A stretch of 63,589 nucleotides of DNA, the filler included, from Octopus bimaculoides (Eukaryota), in assembly GCF_001194135.2 (NCBI RefSeq). It is 5 parts of 5 records of this genome, joined end to end, with 100 filler letters (N's around TTAATTAATTAA, not from the genome) between each part and the next. Parts side by side here need not be neighbours in the genome. Positions count along the whole stretch, not along the records: positions 1 to 28,311 come from NC_069000.1; 4 more parts are not named here. One strand, written 5' to 3'. This document shows, in pieces, positions 124-26,794 of the stretch. Each line of letters opens with the position of its first letter. Position 1 is the first letter of the stretch. The translations under genes were made by a program, and so were the position numbers. Below the pieces are notes generated by a model, which did not search any database, had not been told where the DNA came from, and saw only the letters and a list, made by a program, of their open reading frames with translations.

Positions 124-393
124 ATCCTGTTGATGCCATCAGACTAATTCCAGATGTCAGAGAATGGAGACTGGTTCGTGGCACCAAAAAAACATTCCGA
201 TGTGTAGCACTTGGCAACCCTGACCCCACAATCATATGGGAGTTCTTCCCACAGGCATCTCAAACTAGCAGGATATCTTGGGGTAGAACTATCAAACTGG
301 ACCCTGACACAAGTGGAGTCTATGTGTGTACTGCTAACAACACAGTTGGTGGAATTTCCTATAAATTGACCAAGACTTTGACCGTTACTGTCT
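124..393 (+). CDS. IgSF receptor copy 1, Ig domain exon 'Ig3-a' (I/C2-like set), phase 1-1
   Basis: Pyrimidine-rich acceptor ttttctttcag|124 and donor 393|gtaagt. The 270-nt exon encodes DPVDAIRL...TFRC...PTIIW...DTSGVYVCTANN...LTVTV, with the canonical Ig Cys-Trp-Cys and D-x-G-x-Y-x-C motif. Confidence 0.88.
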
Positions 394-596
394 GTAAGTC
401 AACCATCACTGCTTTCATCTCTCTCACTCTCTCTCTCTCCCTCACTCTCTGAATTCTTCCTTTCTATTGTCTTCGATTTTTACTCTCTTATTTTAACTTC
501 AAGAAGCATCATTTCTACCTGGCTATAATGACACACTATCTGTGTCCTTATACTTTCAAGCAGGGAATTCAGCATCCCCACCTTGCACGAAACAAC

Positions 597-766
597 ATCT
601 GTTGACTACATTATTTACATTTGACGGATATTTGTCCTCATCTTGTTTGTTGTTAACACAACGTTTCGGCTGATATACCCTCCAGCCTTCGTCAAGATGA
701 GGACAAATATCCATCAAATGTAAATAATTCCTCATCTCTTAAATATAGAACTGTATCTGTTGACTA
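597..766. mobile_element. 146-bp fold-back insertion (609-754) with 12-bp target-site duplication, Penelope-like
   Basis: Absent from the paralogous intron at ~3330-3347. Flanked by ATCTGTTGACTA at 597-608 and 755-766. Carries a 35-bp inverted repeat (611-645 / 693-727, 1 mismatch) and a truncated hammerhead core on the minus strand. Confidence 0.85.
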
Positions 767-970
767 GTTTGAGGGTCATTGCTCTTTATCAACACAGAGC
801 AGCTTTTTGGCTAGATGGCACTGCTGAGTTCATGGTTCAAATATATAGATTCCAAGGTGACACACAGCCACTGATCTAGAAATAGAAATACTATTATTTC
901 GAGAGAGACATTTAGAGAGAGACATTCAGTAACAATTCTTTAAAGTAATAGCTAATTACAAAACATATGA

Positions 971-1026
<56 letters not shown>

Positions 1027-1239
1027 CAATTTATGTATATATTAATATTATCTCGGTTGAAAAAACTTTGACAATTTAAATATGTTAATAGTTACAATGG
1101 GTAGCAAAAATCACACAAAAACCAGGATATCACACCCATTTTATAGGTAGAAATACAAAGTTAAAGGGATGTATTTTGAGTAGATATGAAGAATAATAAT
1201 AAATGGAGCAAAACACATATAAACAATAAGTTCCTTTAA

Positions 1240-1326
1240 TTCCTACATATGTTTCAAAATATATGTGCACTCTACTCCAAAGCAGTAAGAGGTGCTGGAA
1301 TTGCATATATATTCATCGTCAGGGAA
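1240..1326 (-). ncRNA. Minimal type I hammerhead ribozyme motif (Penelope-like element type)
   Basis: Minus strand reads UUCC-CUGACGA-U-GAAUAUAUAUGCA...UGCACAUAUAUUU-U-GAA-ACAUAUGU-A-GGAA. Stem I is 4 bp, stem II pairs 12/13, stem III is palindromic, and the cleavage triplet is GUA. Confidence 0.8.
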
Positions 1327-1479
1327 CCAAAATGCAGAAGCAAGATATATTCGAAATGTTAAGGTTACGTACGAGTTATAAGATTATATAGCTAAGTAAG
1401 TGACCATTAGAAACAAGAACACTGGTTTTCATAGATTTATAATGGGAGGGAGACTGTGACCGCTATACTAAAGGTATAA

Positions 1480-1701
1480 TCACCATTTTTTGCGAGAGTA
1501 ACGTTGGAAGTCCTGCACAGGAATTGAAACTTTGTGTTGGCAGTAACTGCGCTACACCAAACCCACCGGTTAAACAGGTCGATCAGTGCATTTTCACACA
1601 AACTGCAAGCCTAATGTTTCAAGTCACCAAAGCAACCATGGAGGCTACATGTAGAGTGGGGACAAGTTCATTGGAAGTAAAACAAACCTGGCAAGTAGAC
1701 T
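1480..1701 (+). pseudogene. 5'-truncated copy of the Ig2 (C2-like) exon
   Basis: About 95% identical to 26608-26794 and ends at a phase-1 donor (gac t|gtaagt, 1701). It lacks the first ~60 nt and the acceptor present in the 26547 copy. Confidence 0.75.
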
Positions 1702-2740
1702 GTAAGTTGTCTGCTTTTCTTTTCTATTGCTAACCACAGTGAGTTGGTTGGATTCTGTGTAAACAATGGATGGGAGGCAATGTGCCTTCATCAAGAGATT
1801 GGTGTTTAGGGATTTATTGGAACCGGTGTTCACCCAATACTCAAGATTCTTGGACTAGGTGTGAAGGTGGGAAATGATGTTGCCAGAAATTTGTTGGAAG
1901 ACTCTCACATAGCAAGTCATTACATCTGAGTTGTGAGAGAAGATGAGTGATGCAGGAAGAATGAGCATGGGAGAGGACAGANNNNNNNNNNNNNNNNNNN
2001 NNNNNNNNNNNNNNNNNNNNNNNNNNNNNNNNNNNNNNNNNNNNNNNNNNNNNNNNNNNNNNNNNNNNNNNNNNNNNNNNNNNNNNNNNNNNNNNNNNNN
2101 NNNNNNNNNNNNNNNNNNNNNNNNNNNNNNNNNNNNNNNNNNNNNNNNNNNNNNNNNNNNNNNNNNNNNNNNNNNNNNNNNNNNNNNNNNNNNNNNNNNN
2201 NNNNNNNNNNNNNNNNNNNNNNNNNNNNNNNNNNNNNNNNNNNNNNNNNNNNNNNNNNNNNNNNNNNNNNNNNNNNNNNNNNNNNNNNNNNNNNNNNNNN
2301 NNNNNNNNNNNNNNNNNNNNNNNNNNNNNNNNNNNNNNNNNNNNNNNNNNNNNNNNNNNNNNNNNNNNNNNNNNNNNNNNNNNNNNNNNNNNNNNNNNNN
2401 NNNNNNNNNNNNNNNNNNNNNNNNNNNNNNNNNNNNNNNNNNNNNNNNNNNNNNNNNNNNNNNNNNNNNNNNNNNNNNNNNNNNNNNNNNNNNNNNNNNN
2501 NNNNNNNNNNNNNNNNNNNNNNNNNNNNNNNNNNNNNNNNNNNNNNNNNNNNNNNNNNNNNNNNNNNNNNNNNNNNNNNNNNNNNNNNNNNNNNNNNNNN
2601 NNNNNNNNNNNNNNNNNNNNNNNNNNNNNNNNNNNNNNNNNNNNNNNNNNNNNNNNNNNNNNATGCTACATTTGACAATTAAGCGTTGCCACATAAAATG
2701 GTTTCCTTAAATTCTCTTTTGATCATCTGTTTTCTTTCAG

Positions 2741-3010
2741 ATCCTGTTGATGCCATCAGACTAATTCCAGATGTCAGAGAATGGAGACTGGTTCGTGGCA
2801 CCAAAAAAACATTTGACTGTGTAACACTTGGCAACCCTGAGCCCACAATCATGTGGGAGTTCTTCCCGCAGGCATCTCAAACCAGCAAGATATCTTGGGG
2901 TAGATCTATTGAACTGGACCCTGACACAAGTGGAGTCTATGTGTGTACGGCTAACAACACAGTTGGTGGAATCTCCAATAAGTTGACCAAGACTTTGACC
3001 GTTACTGTCT
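2741..3010 (+). CDS. IgSF receptor copy 1, Ig domain exon 'Ig3-b', phase 1-1
   Basis: Acceptor tttctttcag|2741 and donor 3010|gtaagt. 270 nt, open frame, 17 nt / 8 aa differences from 124-393. Confidence 0.9.
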
Positions 3011-3639
3011 GTAAGTCAACCATCACTGCTTTCCTCTCTCTCACTCTCTGAATTCTTCCTTTCTATTGTCTTTGATTTTTACTCTCATATTTTAACTTCA
3101 ATTCTTCTTTTCACCCTTATCATTTCTCTGCCTCTACCTGCAAACATCACAACTCTTTCTATCTGTTTCTCATTGGTAATATATATATATACATACACAC
3201 ACACACACACACACATATATAAATAGAATTATTAGCCCCTAGAAGCATCATTTCTACCTGGCTATAACGACACACTATCTGAGTCCTTATACTTTCAAAC
3301 AGGGAATTCAGCATCCTCACCTTGCACGAAACAACATCTGTCGACTAGTTTCAGGGTCATTGCTCTTTATCAACACAGAGCAGCTTTTTGGCTAGATGGC
3401 ACTGCTGAGTTCATGGTTCAAATATATAGATTCCAAGGTGACACACACAGCCACTGATCTAGAAATAGAAATACTATTATTTCGAGAGACATTCAGTAAC
3501 AATTCTTTAAAGTAATAGCTAATTACCAACATTATAACAACCCTTTTACCAGTGACTGGGGGAGTTGATATCATTTTCTTACCATGCTCTCGCTTGCTTC
3601 GTCTGTTTCTGATTAAAAAAATTTATTTATCACTTTAAG

Positions 3640-3753
3640 ATGATCTCCGGACAAAGCCAATGCCACCAACAATGATTGAAGAGCTTTCAACATGCAAACC
3701 AAATCCCAGAACCACAACAGAGAAAGCTGTTGCTTCTGCTGCTTCTGTTACAG
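3640..3753 (+). CDS. IgSF receptor stalk exon (Pro/Thr/Ser-rich), phase 1-1
   Basis: tttaag|3640 and 3753|gtaaat. In frame with Ig3-b, it encodes (Y)DLRTKPMPPTMIEELSTCKPNPRTTTEKAVASAASVT. Confidence 0.75.
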
Positions 3754-4596
3754 GTAAATGGATTTCCTGCCACCCGTCTTTGTTACATTGTTTTTGTTTT
3801 TGTTCAGCCCCAGGTCAGTCAGGCTTGAGAAAAAATTTGTTATTGAGACATACCACTAGGAGTACATTATCTAATGTGCTTTTTATCTATGTAAATATAT
3901 ACATATATATATATATATATANNNNNNNNNNNNNNNNNNNNNNNNNNNNNNNNNNNNNNNNNNNNNNNNNNNNNNNNNNNNNNNNNNNNNNNNNNNNNNN
4001 NNNNNNNNNNNNNNNNNNNNNNNNNNNNNNNNNNNNNNNNNNNNNNNNNNNNNNNNNNNNNNNNNNNNNNNNNNNNNNNNNNNNNNNNNNNNNNNNNNNN
4101 NNNNNNNTATGCATACACACACATATATACACATAACTTCACTAAACAGTATGAATAAATTATATTACATGTGTTTCCATAATGTAGCTATTTATTTGTT
4201 CTAAGTTGAATTATATAACCAGACCCTTTCAGCAGGCATTTTGAATAGTTCACAGATAAGATTGATCACACATACACACACATATCAGTACATGTATGAG
4301 TATGTATATATATATATATATATATACATATGTATGTATGTATATGTGTGTGTGTGTATATATATTTATATATATACATACACAAGTTCAGTTAAAGGTT
4401 AGATACCTCATTAAGGGATAAAAAATCGAATGAATTTACTGGTATATTACCTATTATAAATATTGAATATTATATTTAATATTCAGCAATAAGGTAATTG
4501 GTATAATCATTGAAGCTTGTCTCATATTTACTTCTTTCATTTGTGTTTTTTATTTTTTTTTTATTTCTAATGAATTTCTTCTTTTCTTTTGATCAG

Positions 4597-4710
4597 AAAC
4601 ACTGAATATTATGATTACAAGTGTCATCTCTACGTTGATCATCCTCATTGTTGTGACTGTCTTTGCCATCATTCTGTACAAGTATAGAGCTAGACCAGCA
4701 AAAATTCAAA
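4597..4710 (+). CDS. IgSF receptor transmembrane exon, phase 1-1
   Basis: Long polypyrimidine tract ending gatcag|4597 and donor 4710|gttagt. Encodes (E)TLNIMITSVISTLIILIVVTVFAIILY-KYRARPAKIQ, a hydrophobic helix followed by a basic stop-transfer stretch. Confidence 0.88.
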
Positions 4711-4999
4711 GTTAGTTTATGTCAATTAAGATTTCTTATAAACCACCTTTAAATTACATGTCTATGTCCACCTTGCCTTTGGTTTTAGTCCTTTTTTATA
4801 CCTGTAGGTAACATTTACCTTTCTTCCTTCTATATATTTACCTTTTACCAATCCTGTGAGTGAGTGAATGTTTGTGTGTGCTTGGTTTGATGTGTGTGTG
4901 TGAGTGTGTCTTTGTTTTTCTGTGTGTATGTACTTTACAGAAATGATCCTGTTCTCTTTAACCAATCCCATTAATTAAATCTCTCTTAATCTCTTTCAG

Positions 5000-5021
5000 A
5001 ACCTCGACGAGCTCCACAGAA
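5000..5021 (+). CDS. Probable 22-nt cytoplasmic micro-exon (KPRRAPQ), phase 1-2
   Basis: ctctcttaatctctttcag|5000 and 5021|gtaaga. Open in the frame coming from the TM exon. Confidence 0.5.
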
Positions 5022-5489
5022 GTAAGATAAGATTTCGCNNNNNNNNNNNNNNNNNNNNNNNNNNNNNNNNNNNNNNNNNNNNNNNNNNNNNNNNNNNNNN
5101 NNNNNNNNNNNNNNNNNNNNNNNNNNNNNNNNNNNNNNNNNNNNNNNNNNNNNNNNNNNNNNNNNNNNNNNNNNNNNNNNNNNNNNNNNNNNNNNNNNNN
5201 NNNNNNNNNNNNNNNNNNNNNNNNNNNNNNNNNNNGGGGTGGTGTTACTGCAGATTTCTATGTTTGTGTGTACATATATATATACACACAAATGGTGTAT
5301 GTCTGTGTGTGTGCCTATATGTATATATGAATATACATATGCCTTTTATCTTTTACTTGTTTGAGTCATTTGAATGTGGTCATGCTGGTGCACCACCTTC
5401 AATATATGGGTGTATGTGTATTAATTTTAGTAAGAATAGCTTTGACAATGTATTGTGGAAGGATTCCGATCACCCTTAACTGACCAGAG

Positions 5490-5680
5490 GTGGACGGACT
5501 CATTGCATACCAGTGCAATCTTCTCTCTTGCACACCACATCTGATGCTTTTTTACGCCCAATTTCTCTCTCAAGATGCTTACACTCTGTCATACATGCAC
5601 AGAGACCAATTCTCACTTTTCCTGTTTGTGCTTTCACAGTTTTACAAGTTCTTTGATGTTTTGTGACAATCTTCATGTGC
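5490..5680 (-). mobile_element. RTE-clade LINE, C-terminal fragment
   Basis: With frameshifts, the minus strand reads LREKLGVKSIRCGVQERRLHWY, similar to the RTE remnant near 24.6-24.7 kb. Confidence 0.6.
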
Positions 5681-5686
5681 ATATCA

Positions 5687-5780
5687 ACAGAATGGTATTA
5701 ACAGAATGGTATTAACAGAATGGTATTAACAGAATGGTATTAGCAGAATGGTATTAGCAGAATGGTATTAGCAGATGGTT
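5687..5780 (+). repeat. 14-bp minisatellite (ACAGAATGGTATTA)x~6.5
   Basis: Directly visible. The later units carry GCAG instead of ACAG. Confidence 0.9.
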
Positions 5781-5999
5781 AATGCATTTCATGAATGACA
5801 ACTAATTATTGTTAGGAATCACGAAAGTACTTCTAAAATTTCAGAGTCAAAAAGTTAAATGTGAAACAATCCATGCTGGAATATGAGTGTGCATATACAC
5901 AGAAATATATATACATCAATAGGTGTATATACATATACATCTGCATAAATATATATAGATAGATACAGATATATATATGTGTGTGTGTGTGTGTGTATG

Positions 6000-6030
<31 letters not shown>

Positions 6031-6066
6031 AAGGTATGTATAATCTGGTATTTATGTTTTCTCTAG

Positions 6067-6154
6067 CAACCGGAGACAAGTGAATATGATGAACGGAAAA
6101 CTGGGCCATGCCCATTTGCAAGGGACCCCAAAGAATATTCAGATGTATAACAAT
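6067..6154 (+). CDS. Probable cytoplasmic-tail exon (88 nt; reading frame uncertain)
   Basis: ttttctctag|6067 and 6154|gtgagt, an island of non-repetitive sequence. Frame 0 gives QPETSEYDERKTGPCPFARDPKEYSDV*. Frame 1 gives NRRQVNMMNGKLGHAHLQGTPKNIQMYNN. Confidence 0.55.
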
Positions 6155-6533
6155 GTGAGTGAACTCATTTCCCTTCTTTCTGGTAAACACTCACGCATAC
6201 ACCTGCACAAATGCATGCATACACCCATATACACATACGTACACACACAATGTCCCCTTTTCCTCGCTTTGATATGTCAAATGGAATTTATTGAGGAAGA
6301 TTTCTCTAGGTTCATGCCATTCCTGTCTCCAATCGTCACCGTTTTCCAAGCAAGGTTATATTCTGCATGGCCAGACATGTTTCTTTATGGCCATTTTGGA
6401 CCCAATGGCATCACTTGTAACAAGATGATGCTTATTTACAAACATTATGTGATCTCAGGATAAGGTGACATTCATACACACACACACACACACACACGTG
6501 AGTGTGTGTGTATACATATATACCAATACACAC

Positions 6534-6580
<47 letters not shown>

Positions 6581-6800
6581 GGTTTTTAACTTTTAAATTT
6601 TCATATTCAAAAGAGAGAATCTAGTTAATGATCCCCTAAGGTAAGTTCTTATGCTATATTGGTAACGGTTGCTACATCCTCTGGAAAATTATTATATATA
6701 TATATACATTCTACAGAATATGTTTTGTGGCTCTGCCATTTTCAACCCATTGCATTCTGTTTGCATTTTCATGATACTTATTCCGTTGTTCTTTTGCCAG

Positions 6801-7017
6801 GCATTTGACTGCTGAGGAGAATGAAGAAGGCCTACCTTACATGAAATTTGCTTCAGATGACAATCACTGCAGTAGGAAACCACTGGTTCCCCTCCCACCA
6901 CAATTCTTACAGCTAGGACACAATATTACCAAGCGACTAGAGAGGAGAGCTATCTCTCTTTCTCTATGCCTCTCTCTCTCTCTCTTTCCCATTATTTCTC
7001 TCTATCTATCTGGCTAG
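6801..7017 (+). CDS. Possible terminal cytoplasmic exon
   Basis: gttgttcttttgccag|6801. Phase-2 entry gives HLTAEENEEGLPYMKFASDDNHCSRKPLVPLPPQF..., while phase-0 entry gives AFDC*. The 3' part runs into a (CT)n repeat. Confidence 0.4.
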
Positions 7018-7369
7018 CTATATGTGCAGGTGTCTATCTGTGTAGGTAACTAATTAGCTAACTCTCATTGTTCTATAAAGATAAGCTGTCTCTTTTCATG
7101 TCACACCCTGATCTCTGTAAAATATTTCTCTCTTAACTGCTGCATTCCACATGTGGCTCCATGTGTATGTCCGTGTGGGTGTCTGTGTATTTGTGAACAG
7201 AGTGCATCAGTTTTTTGAGGTTGTTTCTATGAATTTATAGAAAGACACATAGTTCCTCAACAAAACGCCATATTTGAAAACCAATTGGTACGAATAATCT
7301 TGAGAGTTGTTTAACCACACTTATTTAAGGAATCCACTTTAATATAGGGGGTCAAAAATATTGACATGT

Positions 7370-8130
7370 CTCTAATCAGATGACCTTTATCAATTTTGGT
7401 CATACTGCTGAGGATGGCAGACTCAAATTCGTATGGTGTTATGGGGATGTTCATTGAGCTCTCTCATGATTATGTCCCATGTGTAATAATCCCTTGATAA
7501 TTGCCGAGGTAGAAGGTCATGGGTCTAGGAGAATATGATCATGGTGATTGTTATGCATCCACACTTGGGATGTCCTAGCCTTATGAACTGGAGCAGAGAC
7601 AGTCTTCCATTGCATCTGTTGTCTATCCAGGAGGACTCACAACTTTCTGCAACACTTCTGTGCAGACAGCAACATTGACTTTTAAGCCCTGTGAAAAAAG
7701 TGATGAGGCGTGACATCTTTGTCATTGCTGACACCTCCTAGAACCCTCACGCTCACTGGGAATCTTTGTATGCATGACCATTGGAACCTCGTCTGCTCTT
7801 CCCTCGGTTTATCCTTGGACCTGATTGAAAGTTTTTGTTCCTCAGAGGAAAACCAAAACTCTCCAGCCTCTTGGTGTTTCATCTTCTTTAACAATCACTC
7901 TGCACAGATGGAAAAATTCTCTCTTCTTACATCTGACATAAGCTGAGCACTCCACATCACATACGAGTTGTAACAGATCCCCTCCTGCACAAATCTTCCC
8001 ATGATGCATTCTGAATACTTGAGGTCCTTTGCAATGGCTCTGAATGACTTTCCAAGCATTTTATCAATTATTCTTGGTTTTTTTGTACAAAGTTATGTGT
8101 CCTGGTGGTATTAGAACCCTGTGTAACATG
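7370..8130 (-). mobile_element. Decayed Tc1/mariner transposase, most like the DD37D (maT) group
   Basis: ORF 7682-7894 reads KHQEAGEFWFSSEEQKL...FPVSVRVLGGVSNDKDVTPHHFF. Frameshifted downstream pieces read APVHKARTSQVWMHNNHHDHI and DYYTWDIIMRELNEHPHNT. These match the FSDEK / FP..VMVLGVVS..GDV / D.AP.H / LDY..W motifs. No TIRs could be delimited. Confidence 0.75.
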
Positions 8131-11100: not shown

Positions 11101-12037
11101 AACCGTCCAATCCCTCCCCTCTCTCTATTCATTGTGTCTGTGTGTATATATATATATATACACGCACGTACTTATATACATACACATGTATATAGACACA
11201 CCTTTCTATTCTTTGAATCCACAATAATAATACTTTTATGCGTGTGTGGGAGAAAGAGAGAGGGAGAGTGTGTTACGTACTGTTTGAATACCGTGGTAGA
11301 TGACTATGCAAACACACACACTCCACACTCGAGTACATTCCCTCCCACTCGCACTCATACTCCATTTCAAAATGGCTTCTATATCAACCCTGATCCAGCA
11401 AGTGGTTGCTGTCCTGTAAAAAAGAACTCACTTCAAACTTTTCCTGCACTTTCTTCTCCCGTCCATCTGCCCCACGATCGTTCTGCTCCATCATTCTTTT
11501 AATAATTTTACCTCTTCTTTCTATAATTATCCCTTTTAATCAACGATAACAACCACCCAGCACCTGCAAAGCAATCACTTCGGATTATTATTTTTTTAAT
11601 TTATTTTCTTTTCTACTTTTGCACATTTCCATTTCAATTACCTCCTTCCAAACGGATTAATTAATCAAGATGGACTTTTTTATGGCGATTTCTCAACCTC
11701 TAACGACTTTCTTATTATTGTTGTTTTGTAAGTATTTTTTTGCATTCAAAAATTGTTTCTAACCAATCTTAAACACTGTCCTTCTCTCTTTCTGACATAC
11801 ACATATATATGTATATAACCATATATGTATAAAATTAAGCAATGTTTTATTATTCAAAGTGTATACGAAGCAATATATATATATATATATATATATAATG
11901 TGTGTGTGTTTGTGTGTATTCTTTCTTTTATATATATACACGTGTGTCTATCTCCCCCTTCTCCCTCTCTCTCTATATATATACGTGTGTGTATATTCTT
12001 TCTTTTCTGTTTATATATATATATAAGATTTCTCCTA

Positions 12038-12072
<35 letters not shown>

Positions 12073-12551: not shown

Positions 12552-12583
<32 letters not shown>

Positions 12584-16159: not shown

Positions 16160-16245
16160 TAGGAAGGGCATCCAACCATAGAAACTAAGTTATGGGGACA
16201 TAAACACACCATCACTGGTTGTCAAGCAGTGGGGTAGGAGGACAA

Positions 16246-16279
<34 letters not shown>

Positions 16280-16445
16280 GTGTGTGGCAGTCTTCTTTTA
16301 GTTTCCATCTACTAAATCCACTCAGAAATTATAGCTTTGGTCCAAAACTATAATAGAGGACACTTGCCTAAGGTGCCACATAGTGGGACTGATCCCAGAA
16401 CCCTAAGGTTTGGGAAGCAAGCTTCTTACCACATAGCCTTACCTG
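16160..16445 (-). mobile_element. tRNA-derived SINE family A, diverged copy
   Basis: Aligns by eye to the reverse complement of 54971-55350. Confidence 0.7.
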
Positions 16446-18990: not shown

Positions 18991-19336
18991 GGAGGCGCAA
19001 TGGCCCAGTGGTTAAGGCAGCGGACTCGCGGTCAAAGGATCGCGGTTTCCATTCCCAGACCGGGCGTTGTGAGTGTTTATTGAGCGAAAACACCTAAAAG
19101 CTCCATGAGGCTCCGGCAGGGGATGGTGGCGAACCCTGCTGTACTCTTCCACCACAACTTTCTCTCACTCTTTCTTCCTGTTTCTGTTGTGCCTGTAATT
19201 CAAAGGGTCAGCCTTGTCACACTCTTTGTCACATTGAATATCCCCGAGAACTACGTTAAAGGTACACGTGTCTGTGGAGTGCTCAGCCACTTGCACGTTA
19301 ATTTCACGAGCAGGCTATTCCGTTGATCGGATCAAC
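18991..19336 (+). mobile_element. tRNA-derived SINE family B
   Basis: GGAGGCGCAATGGCCCAGTGG head with A-box and B-box-like GGTTTCCATTCCC. The shared body (AACTACGTTAA..GGTACACGTGTCTGTGGAGTGCTCAGCC) recurs at 22687, 30719, 62588 and 48190 (rev). Confidence 0.85.
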
Positions 19337-19565
19337 NNNNNNNNNNNNNNNNNNNNNNNNNNNNNNNNNNNNNNNNNNNNNNNNNNNNNNNNNNNNNNNN
19401 NNNNNNNNNNNNNNNNNNNNNNNNNNNNNNNNNNNNNNNNNNNNNNNNNNNNNNNNNNNNNNNNNNNNNNNNNNNNNNNNNNNNNNNNNNNNNNNNNNNN
19501 NNNNNNNNNNNNNNNNNNNNNNNNNNNNNNNNNNNNNNNNNNNNNNNNNNNNNNNNNNNNNNNNN

Positions 19566-19640
<75 letters not shown>

Positions 19641-19784
19641 GAACTGAGAACTTGTACATAGCTAAGTTATGTTGACAATATCAATTTCTTCATGAATTGT
19701 AACTTTGTCTTTGAGTGAGTGCTATTAGATAAATAAGGGATATCTAAGGAAATTAAATGTCACTTATCAGAAAAATTGCACAAA

Positions 19785-20127
19785 GGCAAAGGTGTGGCTG
19801 TGTGATAAATAGTTTGCCTCCCAACCACATTGCTTCAAGTTCAGTCCTATTGCATAACACCATGGGCAAGCGTCTTTTATGATAGCCCTGAGCCAACCAA
19901 AACCTTGTGAGTGGACTTAGTTGATGGAAACTGAAAGAAGCCTATAATTTGTTTGTGTGTGTATGTATATGTGTGTTTGTCACCCATTGCTTGACAATTG
20001 GTGTTGATTTGTTTATACAATTTTAACTTGGCATTCCAGCAGGCTTTAAATAGGCCCTAGGGTTGATTTGTTTCAAGTGGTGCCCTTGATTTTCCACAGT
20101 CCAGTGACTGAAACAAGAAAAGATTAA
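19785..20127 (+). mobile_element. tRNA-derived SINE family A, diverged copy
   Basis: Head GTGGCTGTGTG...TTCAGTCC, body and CAGTGACTGAAACAAG tail as in 54971-55350. Confidence 0.75.
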
Positions 20128-21485
20128 ATGATAAAGTAGGAAATAAAAGTGCAAATATTATTTAGACTAGTAGAAAACCATCCAGAAGGCAGTGTTTCTG
20201 CTAGTTCTATAAATGATGACATGTCATAATAGATTTGAAAGCTTGCAAGGCATAGATTTATTTAACTTTCTAAAAAGAAAAAGAAAAACTTCCCAAAAAC
20301 ATCACATTGCATCTTATAAACATGAAGTCAGGGTTTGAATTATCAAATGGTGAATCAAGTGTGTAGCAGTTCTCCATACTCTGGGTGACAAGCGATCTCT
20401 CTTACGAAACTGTTTATTAGTAAGTACATTCTACTGTAAGAAACACATATCTATCGTACTTACTGCATGTGAAATAATAAACCAGTCAGGCGGAAAATTT
20501 AGTGACAATGTGTGTGACTATAGACATGCAAAGAAACTAGCAACTGGTTTTCAAAACAAATAATTCTCTTCCAAAACTTTCAAAAGCCAGACCCAGTCAG
20601 TCATTTTCTAAGTTCAAATATTCTACACAGATGAATCATTTCATATAATGTGAACAAAGAAAGGAGGATAACTTGAAAAAATAAGGTATTATTGCCATAA
20701 TAATAATAATAATAATGGAGATTTTCAATATAATATGATATAATACTGACTAATAATCTAATAAATTGAATCATTGTAAACTGAGATGAACCCTCCACTT
20801 TTCTCTCCCACCCTCTTTACATGAAGGCCAAATTATAGAATTGCCAAAATGAGTAGTCATATTTTATGGTTGCTTTATACATAAAATTCTATAACCTGAA
20901 GTAGCCATAATGCAGGAATTGCATTTATGCATGTGTGTGTTCCCTATCTCCAGTTATCTATCACACAATTTTCACTCTGTGCACTTCCTCTTCTGTCTCA
21001 TATTCGCTTGGTACCCACATCTCACATTTCTTTCTTTCCAGGTGGCCAAGCCATGTATCACCTCTTCAGCAAGACACCCGCTCCTCTCTCTCCATCATAG
21101 TTTCTTATTCCTCTAAATTGAGGGGTCTTATTTTGCTGTAGTTGGCAACCTCACCTAAAAGGCACTCAGTACACTCTGTTAAGTGGTTGGCATTAGGAAG
21201 GGCGTCCAAATGTAGAAACCATGCCAAAGCAGACATAGAACTTGGCAGAAACCTCTGGCTCATCTGTTCTTGTCAAATTGTCCAACCCATCCCAGCATGA
21301 GAAAAGGACATTAAATGATGATAATGATGAGAAGATGCCTGGCCTAGTGGTTAAGGGTCACAAGATCAGAGTTTCAATTCCTAGACTGAGTGGCGCATTG
21401 TGTTCTTGAGCAAAACACTTCATTTCATGTTGTTCTGCAATCATTTCAATATCTGATGAGTGATATGCTTTTACAACTGTACAGC

Positions 21486-21526
<41 letters not shown>

Positions 21527-22686
21527 GAGTATGTTGGAAGAGTTTTCTACAGCCAGTATAGCTTTTTGTCACCAACCCACTCTTGTCCCAAGTGAGGTAA
21601 TAATCTCCCTGTCTATCAAACAACAATCGGCTGGAGTCACTTTCAGGGTGGACTACTAGCATGCGATGCTATCAGTGAAGCCATTGTTTGGATGTCAATG
21701 AGGGAAGCACACAAGAAGATACAAGAGAAATATGAAAACAGTGATACATGCACACAACTTGTGTGTTTGTGTATGAGTTCATATGTATATCTACACACAT
21801 AATCAGTGTCCCCCCAAAAATGAATACACACTTTGAATGCTGATGACTTAATTTTTATTTCATTTTATTAGATACTGATTTTTATAATCATCCAATCTGT
21901 ATATTCATTCTGAGGGTGGGATAACCTACATATATGCATATACAGCAGGTTTCTTTCAGTTTCCATCTACCAACTCCACTAAGAAGGCTTTGGTCAGCCT
22001 GGGGATTGAATAGAAGACATTCATTCAAGGTGTCATGCAGTGGGACTGAACTTGGAATCATGTGGCTCTTTACCACACACTCATACCTCCTACATGTGTG
22101 TGTGTGTGTGTATCTGTATATGTGTTTGTGTGTATATATACAGGATTTCCCAAACAATGTGTGCACACATTGAATAATAATATACTGTTTATTTAAATAC
22201 ATTTCAAATTTAATAGAATCTACAGACAGAATTTAATTTTTTTATAAACACCTGTTTTCAAACTGATGACCATTCCAGGCACCACTCATAACATGGAATT
22301 GAAGACATCAAGTAATATTTTGTTCTGTATTTGTACACATTCTCGATAACCCTCAGTTTGTTGACTGTTGCCAGTATTGTACAGTAAACTTTTAATTATC
22401 CCCATAAAAAGAAGTCTAAAAATGTGAGGCCCAGTGAATGTGGATGGTATTTTACTGAACCTCTTAATCCTATCCACCTGTTGGGCAAAATCTCATCAAG
22501 GTAGGCCCTTGCATTACTATGGTAGTGTGTTGGTGCCCCCATCTTGCTGGAAGTAAAACTCCATATCCTCAAAAACCTCTTGAATGTTTGGCATGACAGG
22601 TTGTCACAACAAAGTAGATGGGACCAATCACAGTACCATCCAAAAAGAATGGTTCAGTTAATCCTTTTGTATATGTACACATATGT

Positions 22687-22988
22687 GGAGGCGCAATGGC
22701 CCAGTGGTTAAGGCAGTGGACTTGTGGTCATAGGATCGCGGTTTCGATTTAAAGACTGGGCATTGTGAGTGTTTATTGAGCGAAAACACCTAAAGCTCCA
22801 CAAGGCTGTGGCAGGGGGTGGTGGCAAACTTTCTCACCACAACTTTCTCTCACACTGTCTTCCTGTTTCTGTTGTACCTGTAATTCAAAGGGGCCAGCCT
22901 TGTCACACTCTGTGTCACACTGAATCTCCCCGAGAACTACGTTAAGGGTACACGTGTCTGTGGAGTGCTCAGCCACTTACATGTTAAT
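22687..22988 (+). mobile_element. tRNA-derived SINE family B, 3'-truncated
   Basis: Homologous to 18991-19336 and 30719-31078. Confidence 0.85.
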
Positions 22989-23270
22989 AAATGAGCTGCA
23001 ATGTCATTGGTGCCAAGCTGTATCGGCCTTTGCCTTTCCCTTGGATAACATGAGTGGTGTAGAGTGGGGGAGGCTGGTATGCATGGGCGACTGTTGGTCT
23101 TCCATAAACAGCCTTGCCCAGATTTGTGCCTTGGAGGGTGACTTTCTAGGTGCAATCCTATGGTCATTTATGACCAAAGCAGGGTCACAACAATGTACAC
23201 ACATGTATATCAATATAGAGTCAGACATTCATGTTTATTCATCTTTCTGTGTGTCTTTCTATCATTTCAG

Positions 23271-23603
23271 ATGTTCCAGTTGTGAAATCTCAAGTAGTGA
23301 CATTCTCCATCTCTTCTTCAGCCAAAATTGGTGATTCTGCTCAGTTCTTCTGCAATGCCACCGCCACAGCAATTCAGTACAATGCTATTTTCAAGCATAA
23401 TAACGGCGACATTGCCAAAGTTTATTTACCTGGTAATGGAGGTAAAAGTCATCCCAATACTTCAGTCACTGTTTCAGGCAGCCAGGCTTACTATAAGTAT
23501 GACATCAGTTCTTTGTCTTGTTCTGTCCGAGGAATTTACATGTGTACGGTGATAACTGACAATGGTGCATTTAATAGTAACACTGTGACACTCGATGTTT
23601 TGG
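23271..23603 (+). CDS. IgSF receptor copy 2, N-terminal Ig (V/I-like) exon 'Ig1', phase 1-1
   Basis: ctttctatcatttcag|23271 and 23603|gtaagt. 333 nt, open: DVPVVKSQ...KIGDSAQFFCNA...VRGIYMCTV...VTLDVL. In phase with the 26547 exon (G+GT). Confidence 0.85.
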
Positions 23604-24394
23604 GTAAGTAGTTACCTTTATCTACTCTCACTTTTACTCCTACTCTGTTTCTCCCTCTTTCTGTCTGTCTGTTTATCTATCTGCTTTGGCATGGTTTTTA
23701 TGGCACCCAACACTTTATATTGTGTACTGGGTACTTTTCTCATACCACCAGCACTTGTGTGTTTGCCATGCAGCTTGCAAGCCTACAAAATCTGAAGGGA
23801 TTCAGGGGTTGGAGGATTTAGGCTAACAGATGGGAATTAAGGTATGAATGGTGGTAGGAAGGAGGAGGTTCTAGTAGGAGGAGAACTACATAGCTGCTCA
23901 CATTTGGGAAAGAGTGAGAAATGCATCAGAAGTAGCTGCAAAGAGATAGTGGTGGTGGTGGAGGTGTTTAGGTGGCCTCTCAAGGTATGAAGTGAGTATT
24001 AGTGGGTGTGGGGCAGAGAAACTAGGAGTGGTGGGAGTGGGAGGCAAGAACACTCATGAAGATTGGGTAGGGTTGGAGGATGAATGCAGGAGTGATGATT
24101 GTCAATGATACCTGAATTGGGGAGGTCCAGAGATGCAAGAAAAGAATGGTACAGGATAGTAATGAAGATCCAGGTGATAAGGGTGGGACAGACAGGAGAG
24201 AGATGATGTTTGGTTAGGCTACAGAAAAGTGGGGAGAGTGAGAGTTAGACATATGTCTAATGGGGTGGGGGTGAAGGAGATGAATGTGACATGTGAATGT
24301 AGAGGACAATATTAATGGATAAAAGGGTGTGGTATCGGGACGGATGAGGCTGGGTCACTGCAGTGGGGCAGAGGGTGGATGAGGTGTCCATTAG

Positions 24395-25745
24395 TGCACC
24401 TATGTAGTTCGTACAGCAATAGTGCTTCCAGAAGTCAGTTTTGCTACAATAGGAGTGTCTTAAGGACCATGTGTCACCAGCCAGCTCAGTCCTTTGTCAT
24501 TTCCTCCATGAAGTTTAGGGTCCTCAGATCAACTTTCACTATTTCATCCCATGTCTTTGTGGATCTCTCCAGCCTCATTTAGTGATCAGCGCTTCTTTAT
24601 GCAGCAATCTTCACTCATATGCATCACATGACCATACTAGTGCAGTCTTCTTTCATGCACACTATGGCTGATTCCTCTTATACCTGGTTTTTCTCTCAGC
24701 ACATTTATACTATGTCATTATTCTCTCTCATATTACACATCCAATGGAGTATACTTGCTTCATTTCTTTCCTGTATTCCCACGCCTGCTGTGTTCAAGGC
24801 CCATGTCTCATTTCCATGCTGCATTGCAGTTCTAAACCAACCATCACACAATCTGCCCTTCATTCTGTGGGAGAAGACCTTTGTTGCCAGCAGCAGTAGT
24901 TAACTCCCTGAACTATTTTCAACACATTCTTCCTTAGGCTACTCTGCACTCAGATCAACCTCCTCCCTTGCTAATTAAATCTCCCAAGTTACAAAAAAAA
25001 AACTTCAACTACTTCTAATAAGCCATCCAGGCATTCAAGAGAATCTATTTCTGGTGTCTGTAGTACTTCACTGCTCCAGTGCATTTATCACATGAAGCTT
25101 AAGTTCTCTGCTAGTCTACCACATCTCTTGTGTGCCCATAGCTTACATTGGGTATAGCATATGATGGAGTTTACATCTACACCTTTTCTGCATATTGAGC
25201 AAGACCATTCGCTGGAGGTGCCAGAGTCCTGTCTTCTTTCCTTCTTACTAAAACTTTGTCAAGTTTACGTTATGACCTCTCAGTTCCATGCCTGGAATTA
25301 CTTCTCTAATTCTCATATAGATTCAGCTACGAGACCTAGATCATCAGTGTATAGGACTTCACATGGGCAACCAGTCTTAAACTCCTCTGTGATATCTTGT
25401 GGGACTATGATAATTAAAAGATTAAGGACAGAGCCTCCAACATATATTCTAAATTTGTCACTGAAGCCATCAGTTACTTATTTCATCTTTGTACCTGGCT
25501 TCTACAACTCTCACAAACCATAAGTCAACACAGTTTCCCTACTGCCCACCAGATTACTGTATGTGGTCTCCTAGTCTTGACGTGGAGTGCTTCATGCTGT
25601 CAGCGGTAGTATCATCATCGTTGCCATTGTTTTTATATCCTTTTTCCTATGTTGGATAGGTTGTCCTAATCCGGGTCAATTCTTATTCAGAGTTTCCCCT
25701 TGTCATTTGAATACAGATAGTACAAGGGTGCTCTTCCTGTCTTTA
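24395..25745 (-). mobile_element. Decayed RTE-clade LINE reverse transcriptase
   Basis: Frameshifted minus-strand pieces: GSVLNLLIIIV..EEFKTGCPCEVLYTDDLGLVAES (YADD-like), WAHKRC, LGDLISKGGG, HGNETWALN, RNEASILHWMCN, ERRLH.YGHVMHM. Confidence 0.8.
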
Positions 25746-26546
25746 AGCCTCATCTCTTTCCATGCCACAAACTGTACAATGGCCAGGCATATATTCATGG
25801 AACATTGCAAACAAACAACATCAAATGTACAATGAGGATGAAGATACGCAACAGGTTTCTTCCAGTTTCCGTCAACCAAATCCATTCACAAAGCTTTCAT
25901 CCAACCAGGGATTTCATAGAAGACTCCTGTTTTANNNNNNNNNNTGGTGGTGGTGGTGGTGGTGGAGGTGTTTAGGTGGCCTCTCAAGGTATGAAGTGAG
26001 TATTAGTGGGGGTGGGGCAGAGAAACTAGGAGTGGTGGGAGGCGGAGGCAAGAACACTCCATTCACAAAGCTTTCATCCAACTGGGGATTTCATAGAAGA
26101 CTCCTGTTTTAGCTGCTGCAAAGTAGGATTGAACCTGAAATTATAGATGATGGGGGTGGTGTCAAGTAATAGCTGTCTTTGTTAGTTCCCTGCCACAGAA
26201 TCAACCCTTTTAGCTAAGAACCCCCTGTTAGAGTGTCAGCCCTTTTCATTAAGAACTATTTGTTGACTCCCTGGAAAGTGCATTGTAGGAGAGGGAGAGG
26301 GAAGTCTGTACTGTGTGAGTGGGAGAGGAGATGGTGTACTCTGGAGGCCATGGGGGAGTATCAGGTATTTTGATCAATAAACAAGGAGTAAAAACTTTCT
26401 TTCTTAGCTCACTGCTATATGTCAGCCGTTTTCATTAGGAACTATCTGTTGACTCCCTGAAATTGTTGATAATTCTTAACTTCCCTAACAATATTTTTTA
26501 TTGTATTTAAATGTCCCTTTTTGTTTCTATTTCTTTTTTCCTTCAG

Positions 26547-26794
26547 GTCCAGCTGGAACTCCCAGTTTAAAACCTCTTTCTTATAATCAAATTCTCAATG
26601 ACAGTGTCACCGTTTCTTGCGAGAGTAACGTTGGAAGTCCTGCACAGGAATTGAAACTTTGTGTTGGCAGTAACTGCGCTACACCAAACCCACCGGTTAA
26701 ACAGGACGATCAGTGCACTTTCAGACAAACTGCAAACCTAGCATTCCAAGTCACCAAAGCAACCATGGAGGCTACATGTAGAGTGGGGACAAGT
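26547..26794 (+). CDS. IgSF receptor copy 2, Ig2 (C2-like) exon, cut by an N gap
   Basis: ttcttttttccttcag|26547. Encodes GPAGTPSLKPLSYNQILNDSVTVSCESNVGSPAQELKLC...MEATCRVGTS. The paralogue at 1480-1701 shows the missing 3' end and donor. Confidence 0.85.

What the first reader, a model, noticed from the sequence alone, without database searches (positions are those of the whole stretch)
124..26794. Tandemly duplicated, apparently uncharacterised IgSF membrane receptor (Ig1-Ig2-Ig3-stalk-TM-Tyr tail)
Seen: every Ig, stalk and TM exon is phase 1-1 with good splice sites. The two partial gene copies, linked by the shared Ig2 exon (1480-1701 vs 26547-26794), together imply a V/I-C2-I ectodomain, a stalk, a TM helix and a tail with possible tyrosine motifs. 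Established: this layout is typical of vertebrate paired/inhibitory immune receptors (CEACAM, Siglec and SIRP types) and of adhesion receptors. Inference: this is a local, recently expanding octopod receptor cluster, a candidate for immune or neural recognition. I do not recognise the gene.
Basis: partly seen in the sequence, partly recalled or inferred. Interest (0 to 1): 0.72.

Follow-up and report, generated by a model that had tools for sequence, protein, structure and literature searches.

The report
Tandem octopus Ig-receptor gene pair
The window holds most of one gene and the front half of the next in a tandem pair of uncharacterised octopus cell-surface immunoglobulin-type receptors; the family is conserved across molluscs, and in octopus its outermost domain evolves unusually fast.

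Summary
The exons are real. The window is Octopus bimaculoides chromosome CM046620.1. It carries two head-to-tail paralogues of a type I IgSF receptor: signal peptide, V-like Ig, C2-like Ig, I-set Ig, Thr/Pro-rich stalk, TM helix, tail.

- Gene A covers 124-6815. Its first two exons lie upstream of the window. It has a short tail ending AFDC*.
- Gene B starts at 11670 and is cut at 26794. It is the orthologue of O. sinensis LOC115221682, which has the long tail.
- The same short-tail then long-tail pair sits in the same order in the gapless O. vulgaris assembly, inside a cluster of at least 10 units. So the two copies are neither haplotypes nor one mis-scaffolded gene.

- The "Ig2 exon" at 1480-1701 is a 5'-truncated fragment with no good acceptor.
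- The I-set exon occurs twice (124-393 and 2741-3010), in an arrangement bounded by gaps that cannot be verified here.
- The family is not octopod-specific. Gastropods, bivalves and a nemertean have roughly 500-aa members with a strongly conserved tail. That tail carries ITIM- and ITSM-like tyrosines, which octopods have lost.

Between the two window genes the V-like exon gives dN/dS of about 2.9, while its flanking introns are 94-96% identical. Function is untested.

The parts
124..393 (+). Gene A, I-set Ig exon, copy 1 (membrane-proximal domain type); 270 nt, phase 1-1
   Evidence: Pfam I-set 25.1 bits against a cut-off of 23.7. 88.8% aa identity to O. sinensis P0001 residues 226-314. Splice sites checked.
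46..966 (+). Duplicated block (I-set exon plus about 570 nt of downstream intron), paralogous to 2663-3532
   Evidence: Self-BLAST gives 92-97% identity, and the second copy starts at the first base after the gap. The two exons differ at 17 of 270 nt, dS 0.127, dN/dS 0.38. The downstream intron matches the short-tail gene intron of O. vulgaris and not the long-tail gene intron.
1474..1701 (+). 5'-truncated Ig2 (C2-like) exon fragment. Homology starts at 1480. The donor at 1702 is good and the acceptor is poor.
   Evidence: The NCBI models P0004 and P0011 skip it. The 2015 model P0006 starts inside it.
2741..3010 (+). Gene A, I-set Ig exon, copy 2
   Evidence: 100% match to P0006 and P0011.
3640..3753 (+). 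Gene A, Thr/Pro-rich stalk exon (short-tail type); 114 nt, phase 1-1
   Evidence: 63-65% aa identity to the O. vulgaris P0005 stalk.
4597..4710 (+). Gene A, transmembrane exon (ETLNIMITSVISTLIILIVVTVFAIILYKYRARPAKIQ); phase 1-1
   Evidence: The TM helix is modelled in the orthologous type.
5000..5021 (+). Gene A, 22-nt cytoplasmic mini-exon (KPRRAPQ)
6067..6154 (+). Gene A, cytoplasmic exon (NRRQVNMMNGKLGHAHLQGTPKNIQMYNN), which holds the only YxN tyrosine
6801..6815 (+). Gene A, last coding piece, AFDC plus the TGA stop. Downstream, to about 6950, lies a decayed relic of the ancestral tail exon, out of frame.
   Evidence: The same GCATTTGACTGCTGA is found in the O. vulgaris short-tail gene.
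11670..11727 (+). Gene B, exon 1: start codon and signal peptide MDFFMAISQPLTTFLLLLF, donor gtaagt, phase 1
   Evidence: Homology to the gene A signal-peptide exon region and to the start of O. vulgaris L006.
23271..23603 (+). Gene B, N-terminal V-like Ig exon; 333 nt, phase 1-1. This is the fast-evolving domain.
   Evidence: Against the gene A V exon: dN/dS 2.94, with 45 non-synonymous and 5 synonymous differences, Fisher p 0.017. The flanking introns are 94-96% identical and the exon is 85% identical.
26547..26794 (+). Gene B, Ig2 (C2-like) exon, cut by the assembly gap about 34 nt before its donor
   Evidence: Collinear with O. vulgaris L006 44331-44715.

Best explanation
**Shown.** The window is O. 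bimaculoides chromosome CM046620.1, about 44.786-44.814 Mb. It carries two head-to-tail genes of one IgSF family. The protein layout is signal peptide, V-like Ig, C2-like Ig, I-set Ig, Thr/Pro-rich stalk, one TM helix and a cytoplasmic tail.
- Gene A (124-6815; its signal-peptide and V exons lie upstream of the window) is a short-tail paralogue. A stop codon at the start of the last exon removes the conserved C-terminal module. O. vulgaris shares that stop.
- Gene B (11670 to beyond 26794; the rest lies beyond the window) is the orthologue of the long-tail gene LOC115221682.
- The family is a conserved mollusc and nemertean gene of roughly 500 aa. Its tail carries IEEPPEKPxNN, PDLV, LxY(A/I/S)xLxFDDKPRSRKP, a second tyrosine 22-28 residues later in (T/S)xYxx(V/I), and a C-terminal MPxV.
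- The octopod long-tail proteins examined (O. sinensis, O. vulgaris, Argonauta) keep the backbone of this tail but lack both consensus tyrosine motifs.
- In Octopus the gene has multiplied locally. Ectodomain exons are homogenised within species, while the V-like exon accumulates amino-acid changes faster than silent or intronic changes.

**Inferred.**
- The V-like tip binds a fast-changing ligand, either a microbe or a polymorphic self or partner molecule.
- The long-tail form signals through the conserved tail. Ancestrally this would be by tyrosine phosphorylation and docking of a tandem-SH2 phosphatase of the SHP-2 type. In octopods some other route, still to be found, would be used.
- The short-tail copies, such as gene A, bind similar ligands without that signal and so act as decoys or modulators, in the manner of paired receptors.
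For: **Identity and anatomy**
- The window is 100% identical to L001 9921-38231.
- The exon map comes, and the spliced gene A equals XP_014771964.1.
- The full-length architecture is seen in P0001, P0008 and P0009.
- The AlphaFold model has three Ig domains (pLDDT mostly above 90 for D2 and D3), a disordered stalk and a TM helix at 359-378.
- Pfam finds I-set for D3, and C2-set_2 for D2 of the Pomacea and Lineus members.

**True paralogues in conserved order**
- In gapless O. vulgaris OX597833.1, the short-tail gene lies at 4.420-4.439 Mb and the long-tail gene at 4.452-4.504 Mb, on the same strand.
- Window 7067-26794 is collinear with L006.
- The cluster holds at least 10 units.

**Family breadth and tail conservation**
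- Exhaustive HMMER gave 454 hits. The roughly 500-aa members align in a single stretch through the TM and tail.
- Taxa are listed.
- Alignment A2 has the invariant columns P443, S445, R446, P448 and V465.
- A cephalopod-like transcript, P0190, keeps LYYAEL and MPQV.

**Old tail truncation**
- The same AFDC-TGA is present in O. vulgaris, and the downstream relic needs frameshifts to be read.

**Selection gradient**
- V exon dN/dS is 1.6-2.9 within species. The window pair gives 2.94, p 0.017.
- Ig2 is about 0.8-1.4 and I-set 0.4-0.7.
- Within-species dS of the V exon is 0.05-0.07, against 0.14-0.22 between species.
Against: - No expression, ligand or signalling data exist. I found no paper on the family.
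- The dN/dS excess rests on single exons of about 110 codons. Only one pair reaches p below 0.05, and mosaic gene conversion could inflate the contrast between exon and introns.
- The short-tail genes have no charged TM residue, so they do not meet the classical definition of an activating paired receptor.
- The octopod long-tail proteins lack the ITIM- and ITSM-like tyrosines, so the phosphatase-docking mechanism cannot be assumed for the genes in this window.
- Fold and sequence matches to solved structures are generic three-Ig matches at 13-19% identity.
- Gene A may be partly decayed: it has a truncated Ig2 fragment, and O. vulgaris lacks two of its tail exons.
Confidence: 0.7

Rival explanations
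1. It is a nectin/CADM-type adhesion molecule. Its three Ig domains would hold cells together by homophilic or heterophilic trans-binding, for example in the nervous system or in epithelia, rather than acting as a recognition receptor.
For: - The domain order is the same (V, C2, C2/I, TM, short tail).
- Automatic names are CADM1/2/3/4-like and nectin-1/3-like.
- A profile match to CADM4 (5zo1) covers 73-337 in one stretch.
- Foldseek hits nectin-3 and CD155 with TM-scores normalised to the target of 0.53-0.59.
- The gene appears as one locus, often with several isoforms, in each non-octopod listed in the look-ups; copy number was not counted. That would fit a housekeeping adhesion role.
Against: - The tail has no 4.1/FERM-binding motif and no EYFI or (E/A)xYV C-terminus. 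It has its own conserved module ending MPxV.
- Dozens of unrelated IgSF proteins score as well or better.
- A V exon dN/dS above 1 and local gene amplification are unusual for homophilic adhesion molecules.
Confidence: 0.2
2. The duplication is an assembly artefact: the two copies are haplotypes, or one gene scaffolded twice. A narrower version holds that only the intragenic arrangement is an artefact. That arrangement is I-set 124-393, then the Ig2 fragment 1474-1701, then I-set 2741-3010. It could come from interleaved or chimeric short-read contigs.
For: - This is a gap-rich short-read assembly.
- The repeat block starts exactly at a gap edge (2663), and Ig2 of gene B ends at a gap edge.
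- A clear local mosaic exists at 25945-26111.
- Homology of the first block ends at a (TA)30 run, where contigs can be chimeric.
- The gapless O. vulgaris orthologues have a single I-set exon and the canonical exon order.
Against: **Against the two-gene version**
- The stalk, TM and tail differ, each has its own orthologue in O. vulgaris, and the order and collinearity over 20 kb are the same.

**Against the intragenic version**
- The two I-set exons differ by 6.3% with dS 0.13, and both are intact. That is too divergent for alleles.
- The I-set copy 1 intron is of the short-tail-gene type, so it is not a stray piece of gene B.
- Tandem exon duplications do occur in the gapless O. vulgaris cluster: Ig2 twice in L004 and the stalk twice in P0012.
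Confidence: 0.05
3. Gene A is a decaying copy (a pseudogene or on its way to one), not a working short-tail receptor.
For: - The stop removes the conserved tail, and the sequence downstream has drifted.
- There is a truncated Ig2 fragment inside the gene.
- The O. vulgaris orthologue lacks the 22-nt and 88-nt tail exons.
- Ig2 dN/dS is near 1.
Against: - All other exons are open with canonical splice sites.
- The I-set exons are under purifying selection, dN/dS 0.38.
- The stop is shared by two species while the ectodomain, stalk and TM stay intact.
- Many short-tail units are kept in O. vulgaris.
Confidence: 0.15

Closest known systems
Predicted proteins of the same family: O. bimaculoides XP_014771964.1 and XP_014771957.1, UniProt A0A0L8IEN7, O. 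sinensis LOC115221682, O. vulgaris CAI9737183-88
   Same: XP_014771964.1 is encoded exon for exon by gene A. LOC115221682 is the full-length orthologue type of gene B.
   Different: - All are automatic models with conflicting names: FGFRL1, roundabout 2, CEACAM5-like, CADM2-like.
- XP_014771957.1 joins the gene A I-set exons to the gene B stalk, TM and tail across 40 kb, so it is a chimera.
- Both NCBI models start at an ATG inside an intron, because the true 5' exons lie beyond a gap.
Tandem-ITIM receptors that dock SHP-2: SIRP-alpha (SHPS-1), PZR (MPZL1), PECAM-1
   Same: - Non-octopod family members have LxY(A/I/S)(D/E)L and, 22-28 residues later, (T/S)xY(A/S)(D/E)(V/I).
- From my own knowledge, this matches the ITIM and ITSM consensus and the spacing used by tandem SH2 domains.
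- NCBI named the Dreissena member 'tyrosine-protein phosphatase non-receptor type substrate 1-like'.
- An unrelated oyster Ig receptor with two ITIMs acts as an inhibitory receptor in haemocytes (PMC11841013).
   Different: - The two window genes lack these motifs: gene A is truncated, and the gene B type has LSSMEV and TYNTTL.
- The ectodomain is V, C2, I rather than V, C1, C1.
- No sequence relationship beyond generic Ig was found.
- Phosphatase binding is untested.
Nectin and nectin-like (CADM) adhesion molecules
   Same: Three Ig domains in V-C2-C2-like order, a single TM and a short tail. They are among the structural matches.
   Different: The tail motifs that define them are absent. This family has a different conserved tail. 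The V domain evolves fast and the gene has been amplified locally.
Vertebrate multigene paired-receptor clusters (CEACAM, SIRP, Siglec, KIR types)
   Same: - Tandem cluster.
- Near-identical ectodomain exons beside divergent TM and tail regions.
- Long-tail and short-tail forms.
- Fast evolution of the membrane-distal domain and signs of gene conversion.
   Different: - The short-tail forms have no charged TM residue.
- The octopus long-tail form has no ITIM.
- The family arose independently in lophotrochozoans.

Membership tests
Immunoglobulin superfamily, type I single-pass receptor | Ig-fold domains with the B-F cysteine pair and core tryptophan, a signal peptide, one TM helix and a cytoplasmic tail | tested here: met
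   - Pfam I-set and Ig_3 score above their cut-offs.
- Invariant columns C155, C208, C251, W263 and C293 in A2.
- The model shows three Ig sandwiches and a TM helix at 359-378.
- The signal-peptide exon is at 11670-11727.
The mollusc and nemertean 'FDDKPRSRKP-tail' IgSF family (unnamed; defined here) | V-like, C2 and I-set ectodomain plus a tail with IEEPPEKPxNN, PDLV, FDDKPRSRKP and C-terminal (M/L)PxV | tested here: met
   - Gene B type: all four tail motifs are present in P0001 and in the gene B tail exons just beyond the window.
- Gene A: the ectodomain and TM match. The tail keeps only remnants (KPRRAPQNN, MYNN) and stops before FDDKPRSRKP, whose out-of-frame relic lies at about 6802-6900.
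ITIM/ITSM inhibitory receptors (SIRP-alpha, PZR, PECAM-1 type) | One or more cytoplasmic (I/V/L/S)xYxx(I/V/L) or TxYxx(V/I) motifs | tested here: not met
   Neither motif is present in the gene A tail or in the octopod long-tail proteins. At least one of the two consensus motifs is present in 11 of the 13 non-octopod members scanned, and both in 9.
ITIM/ITSM inhibitory receptors (SIRP-alpha, PZR, PECAM-1 type) | Phosphotyrosine-dependent binding of the SHP-1, SHP-2 or SHIP phosphatases | not testable with these tools
   This needs pull-down or phosphopeptide binding with the molluscan SHP-2 orthologue.
Nectin / CADM | A C-terminal PDZ ligand (nectin (E/A)xYV; CADM EYFI) and, for CADM, a juxtamembrane 4.1/FERM-binding motif | tested here: not met
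   The C-termini are LPCV (octopods), MPxV (other members) and AFDC (gene A). The motif definitions come from my own knowledge.
Nectin / CADM | Specific sequence relationship (best reciprocal similarity) to nectin or CADM ectodomains | tested here: inconclusive
   CADM4 is matched at E 3e-25, but contactins, Robo, DSCAM, CEA, ALCAM and others score higher. Foldseek identities are 13-19% across many families.
CEACAM | An N-terminal V-type domain without the intradomain disulfide, followed by C2-set A/B domains; a vertebrate family | tested here: not met
   The N-terminal domain keeps both cysteines (C46 and C102 of P0001, nearly invariant in A2). The 'CEACAM5-like' names are automatic. The definition comes from my own knowledge.
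Paired activating/inhibitory receptors | Closely similar ectodomains joined to divergent TM and tail regions within one cluster | tested here: met
   Ig2 is 94.7% identical at the nucleotide level between genes A and B, against about 47-54% aa identity for the TM and tail exons (the stalk was not compared directly between the two types). The same two tail types occur in O. vulgaris.
Paired activating/inhibitory receptors | The short-tail member has a charged TM residue that recruits an ITAM adaptor | tested here: not met
   The gene A TM, IMITSVISTLIILIVVTVFAIIL, has no Lys, Arg, Asp or Glu.

The most novel reading that the evidence does not exclude
The ancestral gene is a lophotrochozoan-wide inhibitory-type receptor that docks an SHP-2-like phosphatase through a tandem ITIM/ITSM tail. 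Octopods then rewired it. They lost both tyrosines, amplified the gene into a cluster of long-tail and short-tail forms, and put the V-like tip under diversifying selection. The result would be an independently evolved invertebrate counterpart of the vertebrate paired-receptor clusters (SIRP, CEACAM), engaged in pathogen or self/partner recognition.
Probability: 0.25. Interest if true: 0.7.

Novelty: new member of a known kind. Interest (0 to 1): 0.45.

Why it matters
Cephalopods have no antibodies, and few of their surface recognition receptors are known.

- **A candidate receptor set.** This locus offers a defined, small and testable set: a gene conserved across molluscs, with a tail built like those of vertebrate phosphatase-docking receptors. 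In Octopus it has become a local multigene cluster whose outermost domain changes fast.
- **A handle on two questions.** It bears on ITIM-type signalling outside deuterostomes and on how octopus cells tell ligands apart.
- **A practical correction.** The public O. bimaculoides models for this locus are misnamed, start inside an intron, and in one case fuse two genes.

Tried and rejected
- **Composite three-domain query in the word-indexed search**. It found only seven Octopus proteins and suggested an octopod-only family. The exhaustive HMMER search overturned this.
- **Tail-only profile search**. It returned only short fragments, one from a land snail. It did not even return the known members, so it says nothing about other phyla.
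- **Solved structures, by sequence and by fold**. Only generic multi-Ig matches came back, so no family could be assigned.
- **Literature**. Nothing on this family. The oyster 'CgNCAM1' with two ITIMs has an FN3 domain and 617 aa, so it is a different gene.
- **Idea that the contig 1-1981 is the missing I-set region of gene B.** Rejected because its intron matches the short-tail-gene intron of O. vulgaris, not the long-tail one.
- **Idea that AFDC* is a sequencing error.** Rejected because O. vulgaris has the same codons.
- **An in-frame alternative acceptor or donor that would restore the long tail in gene A.** None found by reading the sequence. Only skipping the 88-nt exon would put the relic in frame, and that is unsupported.
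- **Other checks.**
  - tRNA and Rfam scans found nothing.
  - Pfam on intronic and intergenic ORFs gave only a weak PHD-like match.
  - P0001 is not on record in the contig index.
  - Loci L003 and L005 were fetched but were not available to scripts.

Full report
**1. What the window is**

Positions 1-28311 are 100% identical to Octopus bimaculoides assembly GCA_001194135.2, chromosome CM046620.1, at L001 9921-38231. This is a short-read assembly, and the piece lies between gaps of 2153 N and 5996 N. Composition and microsatellites are typical of octopus DNA.

**2. Are the exons real?**

Yes. A six-frame scan and tblastn with Octopus proteins place these exons on the + strand.
- I-set Ig: 124-393.
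- Ig2 fragment: 1474/1480-1701.
- A second I-set Ig: 2741-3010.
- Stalk: 3640-3753.
- TM: 4597-4710.
- 22-nt mini-exon: 5000-5021.
- Tail exon: 6067-6154.
- Last coding piece: 6801-6815 (AFDC, stop).
- Then, for the next gene: signal-peptide exon 11670-11727, V-like Ig exon 23271-23603 and Ig2 exon 26547-26794, cut by a gap.

Splicing the first set without the Ig2 fragment gives XP_014771964.1 residue for residue. All Ig, stalk and TM exons are phase 1-1 with canonical sites, except the Ig2 fragment.
- Homology of the fragment to every other Ig2 exon begins exactly at 1480, about 60 nt into the exon.
- Positions 1020-1479 match nothing related.
- The nearest in-phase AG (1472-1473) has no pyrimidine tract.

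**3. The gaps**

No reading frame crosses a gap except Ig2 of gene B at 26794.
- The three gaps in gene A (1982-2662, 3922-4107, 5039-5235) are intronic.
  - For 1982-2662 and 3922-4107 the flanks lie in the order of their O. vulgaris counterparts. For 5039-5235 only the protein alignment shows that no residue is missing, because O. vulgaris lacks the two tail exons that flank it.
- The gaps at 15001-15489 and 19337-19565 lie in intron 1 of gene B, and 25935-25944 lies in intron 2.
  - Window 7067-26794 is collinear, block by block, with the gapless O. vulgaris locus L006. This validates order and orientation there.
- At 25945-26111 the assembly holds a mosaic: a copy of 23941-24055 followed by a repeat of 25881-25934. 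The mosaic has no counterpart in O. vulgaris.
- The contig 27420-28311 matches only a dispersed repeat and cannot be placed.

**4. Two genes, not one**

The full-length proteins of O. sinensis (LOC115221682, 465 aa) and O. vulgaris (CAI9737188) read: signal peptide, V-like Ig, Ig2, I-set, stalk, TM, 91-aa tail.
- On the O. bimaculoides chromosome, gene A has its signal-peptide and V exons 2.4-5.8 kb upstream of the window. It ends at 6815.
- Gene B starts at 11670. Its stalk, TM and tail exons lie 7-11.6 kb beyond the window.
- The two genes have different stalk, TM and tail types, about 47-54% aa identical.
- Each type has its own orthologue in O. vulgaris, where the short-tail gene (4.420-4.439 Mb) is followed on the same strand by the long-tail gene (4.452-4.504 Mb).

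So the copies are neither haplotypes nor a scaffolding duplicate, and the pair predates the split of the two Octopus species. NCBI model XP_014771957.1 ('FGFRL1 isoform X1') is a chimera of the gene A I-set exons and the gene B 3' exons.

**5. The cluster**

In O. vulgaris, the models CAI9737183-88 and a 723-aa neighbour together hold at least 10 V-domain units between 4.29 and 4.50 Mb, in both orientations. Several are fused by the annotator. The composition of the units varies.
- Some are V, Ig2, stalk, TM with no I-set exon.
- One gene has two tandem Ig2 exons.
- One has two stalk exons.

Exon duplication therefore does occur in this cluster.

**6. The unresolved piece**

The block 46-966 (I-set exon plus intron) recurs at 2663-3532, starting at the first base after a gap.
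- The two exons differ at 17 of 270 nt (dS 0.13, dN/dS 0.38), and both are intact. That is too divergent for alleles.
- The intron after copy 1 is of the short-tail-gene type, so it is not a stray piece of gene B.
- A tandem duplication running from mid-Ig2 to about 570 nt past the I-set exon would give exactly the observed order.
- However, the first block ends in a (TA)30 run, and the O. vulgaris orthologues have one I-set exon each.

I rate a real intragenic duplication and a contig-level artefact as roughly even. Only long reads or PCR can decide.

**7. The family is old**

Exhaustive HMMER with the 465-aa protein gave 454 hits.
- The giant hits are generic Ig repeats.
- A set of roughly 500-aa proteins aligns in one stretch through the TM and tail. 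It includes Argonauta (52% identity), the gastropods Pomacea, Babylonia, Haliotis, Littorina, Nucella, Patella, Lottia and Lymnaea, the bivalves Dreissena, Mizuhopecten, Ruditapes, Crassostrea, Mya, Mercenaria and Mytilus, and the nemertean Lineus.
- Their automatic names disagree widely.
- The tail is the most conserved part: IEEPPEKPxNN, PDLV, (Y/F)NN, EDxLxYxxLxFDDKPRSRKP, a second tyrosine, and a C-terminal MPxV.
- Pfam has no model for the tail, and there is no FN3 domain.

**8. Tail motifs**

- Of 13 non-octopod members scanned, 11 carry at least one consensus motif: LxY(A/I/S)(D/E/Q)L at the first tyrosine or (T/S)xY(A/S)(D/E)(V/I) at the second. Nine carry both. In the 12 members that keep both tyrosines, the two lie 22-28 residues apart.
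- From my own knowledge, these fit the ITIM and ITSM consensus and the spacing used by the tandem SH2 domains of SHP-2, as in SIRP-alpha, PZR and PECAM-1.
- Octopus long-tail proteins read LSSMEV and TYNTTL, and Argonauta has no tyrosine at either site. An unnamed cephalopod-like transcript (P0190) keeps LYYAEL and MPQV. The loss therefore looks octopod-specific.
- The gene A tail has a single YNN.
- Its stop codon (GCA TTT GAC TGC TGA) is shared with the O. vulgaris short-tail gene. Downstream, the ancestral tail exon survives only as an out-of-frame relic.
- The O. vulgaris short-tail gene has also lost the 22-nt and 88-nt exons.

**9. Evolutionary pattern**

Nei-Gojobori estimates give the following.

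| Exon | dN/dS |
|---|---|
| V-like, gene A vs gene B | 2.94 (45 non-synonymous, 5 synonymous differences; Fisher p 0.017) |
| V-like, O. vulgaris pairs | 1.6-2.7 |
| Ig2 | about 0.8-1.4 |
| I-set | 0.4-0.7 |

- The V exon is 85% identical between genes A and B, while its flanking introns are 94-96% identical. Thirty-two of the 34 replacements fall in the middle 70 residues.
- For the V exon, within-species dS (0.05-0.07) is below between-species dS (0.14-0.22). Yet the two tail types are older than the species split, so the ectodomain exons have been homogenised by gene conversion or repeated duplication.

**10. Structure**

The AlphaFold2 model has three Ig sandwiches, a disordered stalk, a TM helix (359-378) and a disordered tail. 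Foldseek and profile searches against solved structures return many three-Ig ectodomains at 13-19% identity: MAG, CD22, LRIG1, DIPs, SYG-2, CEACAM6, CD155, nectin-3, SIRP-alpha and CADM4. None stands out.

**11. Interpretation**

- *Shown:* a conserved lophotrochozoan IgSF receptor gene. In Octopus it exists as a cluster of long-tail and short-tail forms with a fast-evolving tip.
- *Inferred:* the V-like domain binds a changing ligand. The long-tail form signals through the conserved tail, ancestrally by phosphotyrosine docking of an SHP-2-type phosphatase. The short-tail forms act as decoys or modulators.
- *Rivals:* nectin/CADM-like adhesion, assembly artefact (credible only for the intragenic I-set duplication) and decay of gene A are weighed in the rival section.
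- No expression or binding data could be obtained here, and no paper on the family was found.

**12. Verdict**

The genes are already in the databases as misnamed predictions. The kind of system, a clustered IgSF receptor family, is well known. What is new is the family-level picture: the conserved tail, the octopod loss of its tyrosines, the old short-tail paralogue and the excess of replacements in the V domain. Interest is moderate.

Noticed in passing
window 81-123 and 2698-2740: Both NCBI models for this locus start at an ATG (MVSLNSLLIICFLS) that lies in the intron just upstream of the I-set exon. The real 5' exons sit beyond a 2153-N gap. The 'signal peptide' of these models is therefore intron sequence read through the acceptor.
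   Followed up: yes
window 25945-26111: Right after the 10-N gap the assembly holds a 113-nt copy of 23941-24055 and then a 54-nt repeat of 25881-25934. The gapless O. vulgaris locus has neither. This looks like a gap-closing artefact inside an intron.
   Followed up: yes
window 6802-6950: An out-of-frame relic of the ancestral tail exon lies downstream of the gene A stop. It still reads EEGLPYMKFASDDNHCSRKPLVPL, which keeps the ITIM-position tyrosine that the long-tail octopus gene has lost. Skipping the 88-nt exon 6067-6154 would put it in frame. No evidence that this happens.
   Followed up: partly
window 27556-27783 (also 17410-17674 on the minus strand): A unit of about 185-230 bp that is single-copy here forms a tandem array of about 10 copies in O. 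vulgaris (L002 36586-38423). It also recurs at several places in L001 and L006, so it is a satellite or dispersed repeat.
   Followed up: partly
window 14418-14976: Two copies, 92% identical and 361 bp apart, of an element of about 200-270 bp abut the gap at 15001. The element recurs many times in both orientations in L001 and L006, which fits a SINE-like interspersed repeat and probably explains the gap.
   Followed up: partly
window 24607-25416, minus strand: Intron 2 of gene B carries open frames on the opposite strand, including a Cys-rich stretch with a weak PHD-finger match (E 4e-4, below the cut-off). The region has a 63% identical counterpart in an O. vulgaris intron (L002 20025-20863). 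It is probably a transposable-element remnant.
   Followed up: partly
window 7528-8092 and 22289-22653, minus strand: Broken open frames here look to me like Tc1/mariner transposase pieces (for example ...DEILPNRWIGLRGSVKYHPHSLGLTFLDFFLWG). Pfam gave no hit at E 0.01 or better for the fragments submitted, so this rests on my reading only.
   Followed up: partly
window 18113-18743: A purine-rich low-complexity stretch on the + strand (GC skew +0.47 over 18001-19000) gives long spurious open frames on the minus strand.
   Followed up: no
L004 12729-13004 and 13576-13851 (O. vulgaris): One O. vulgaris cluster gene has two tandem Ig2 exons in a gapless assembly. The annotated proteins P0012 and P0189 are fusions of three receptor units each, and some of those units lack the I-set exon. 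Domain composition therefore varies within the cluster, and the annotation merges neighbouring genes.
   Followed up: partly
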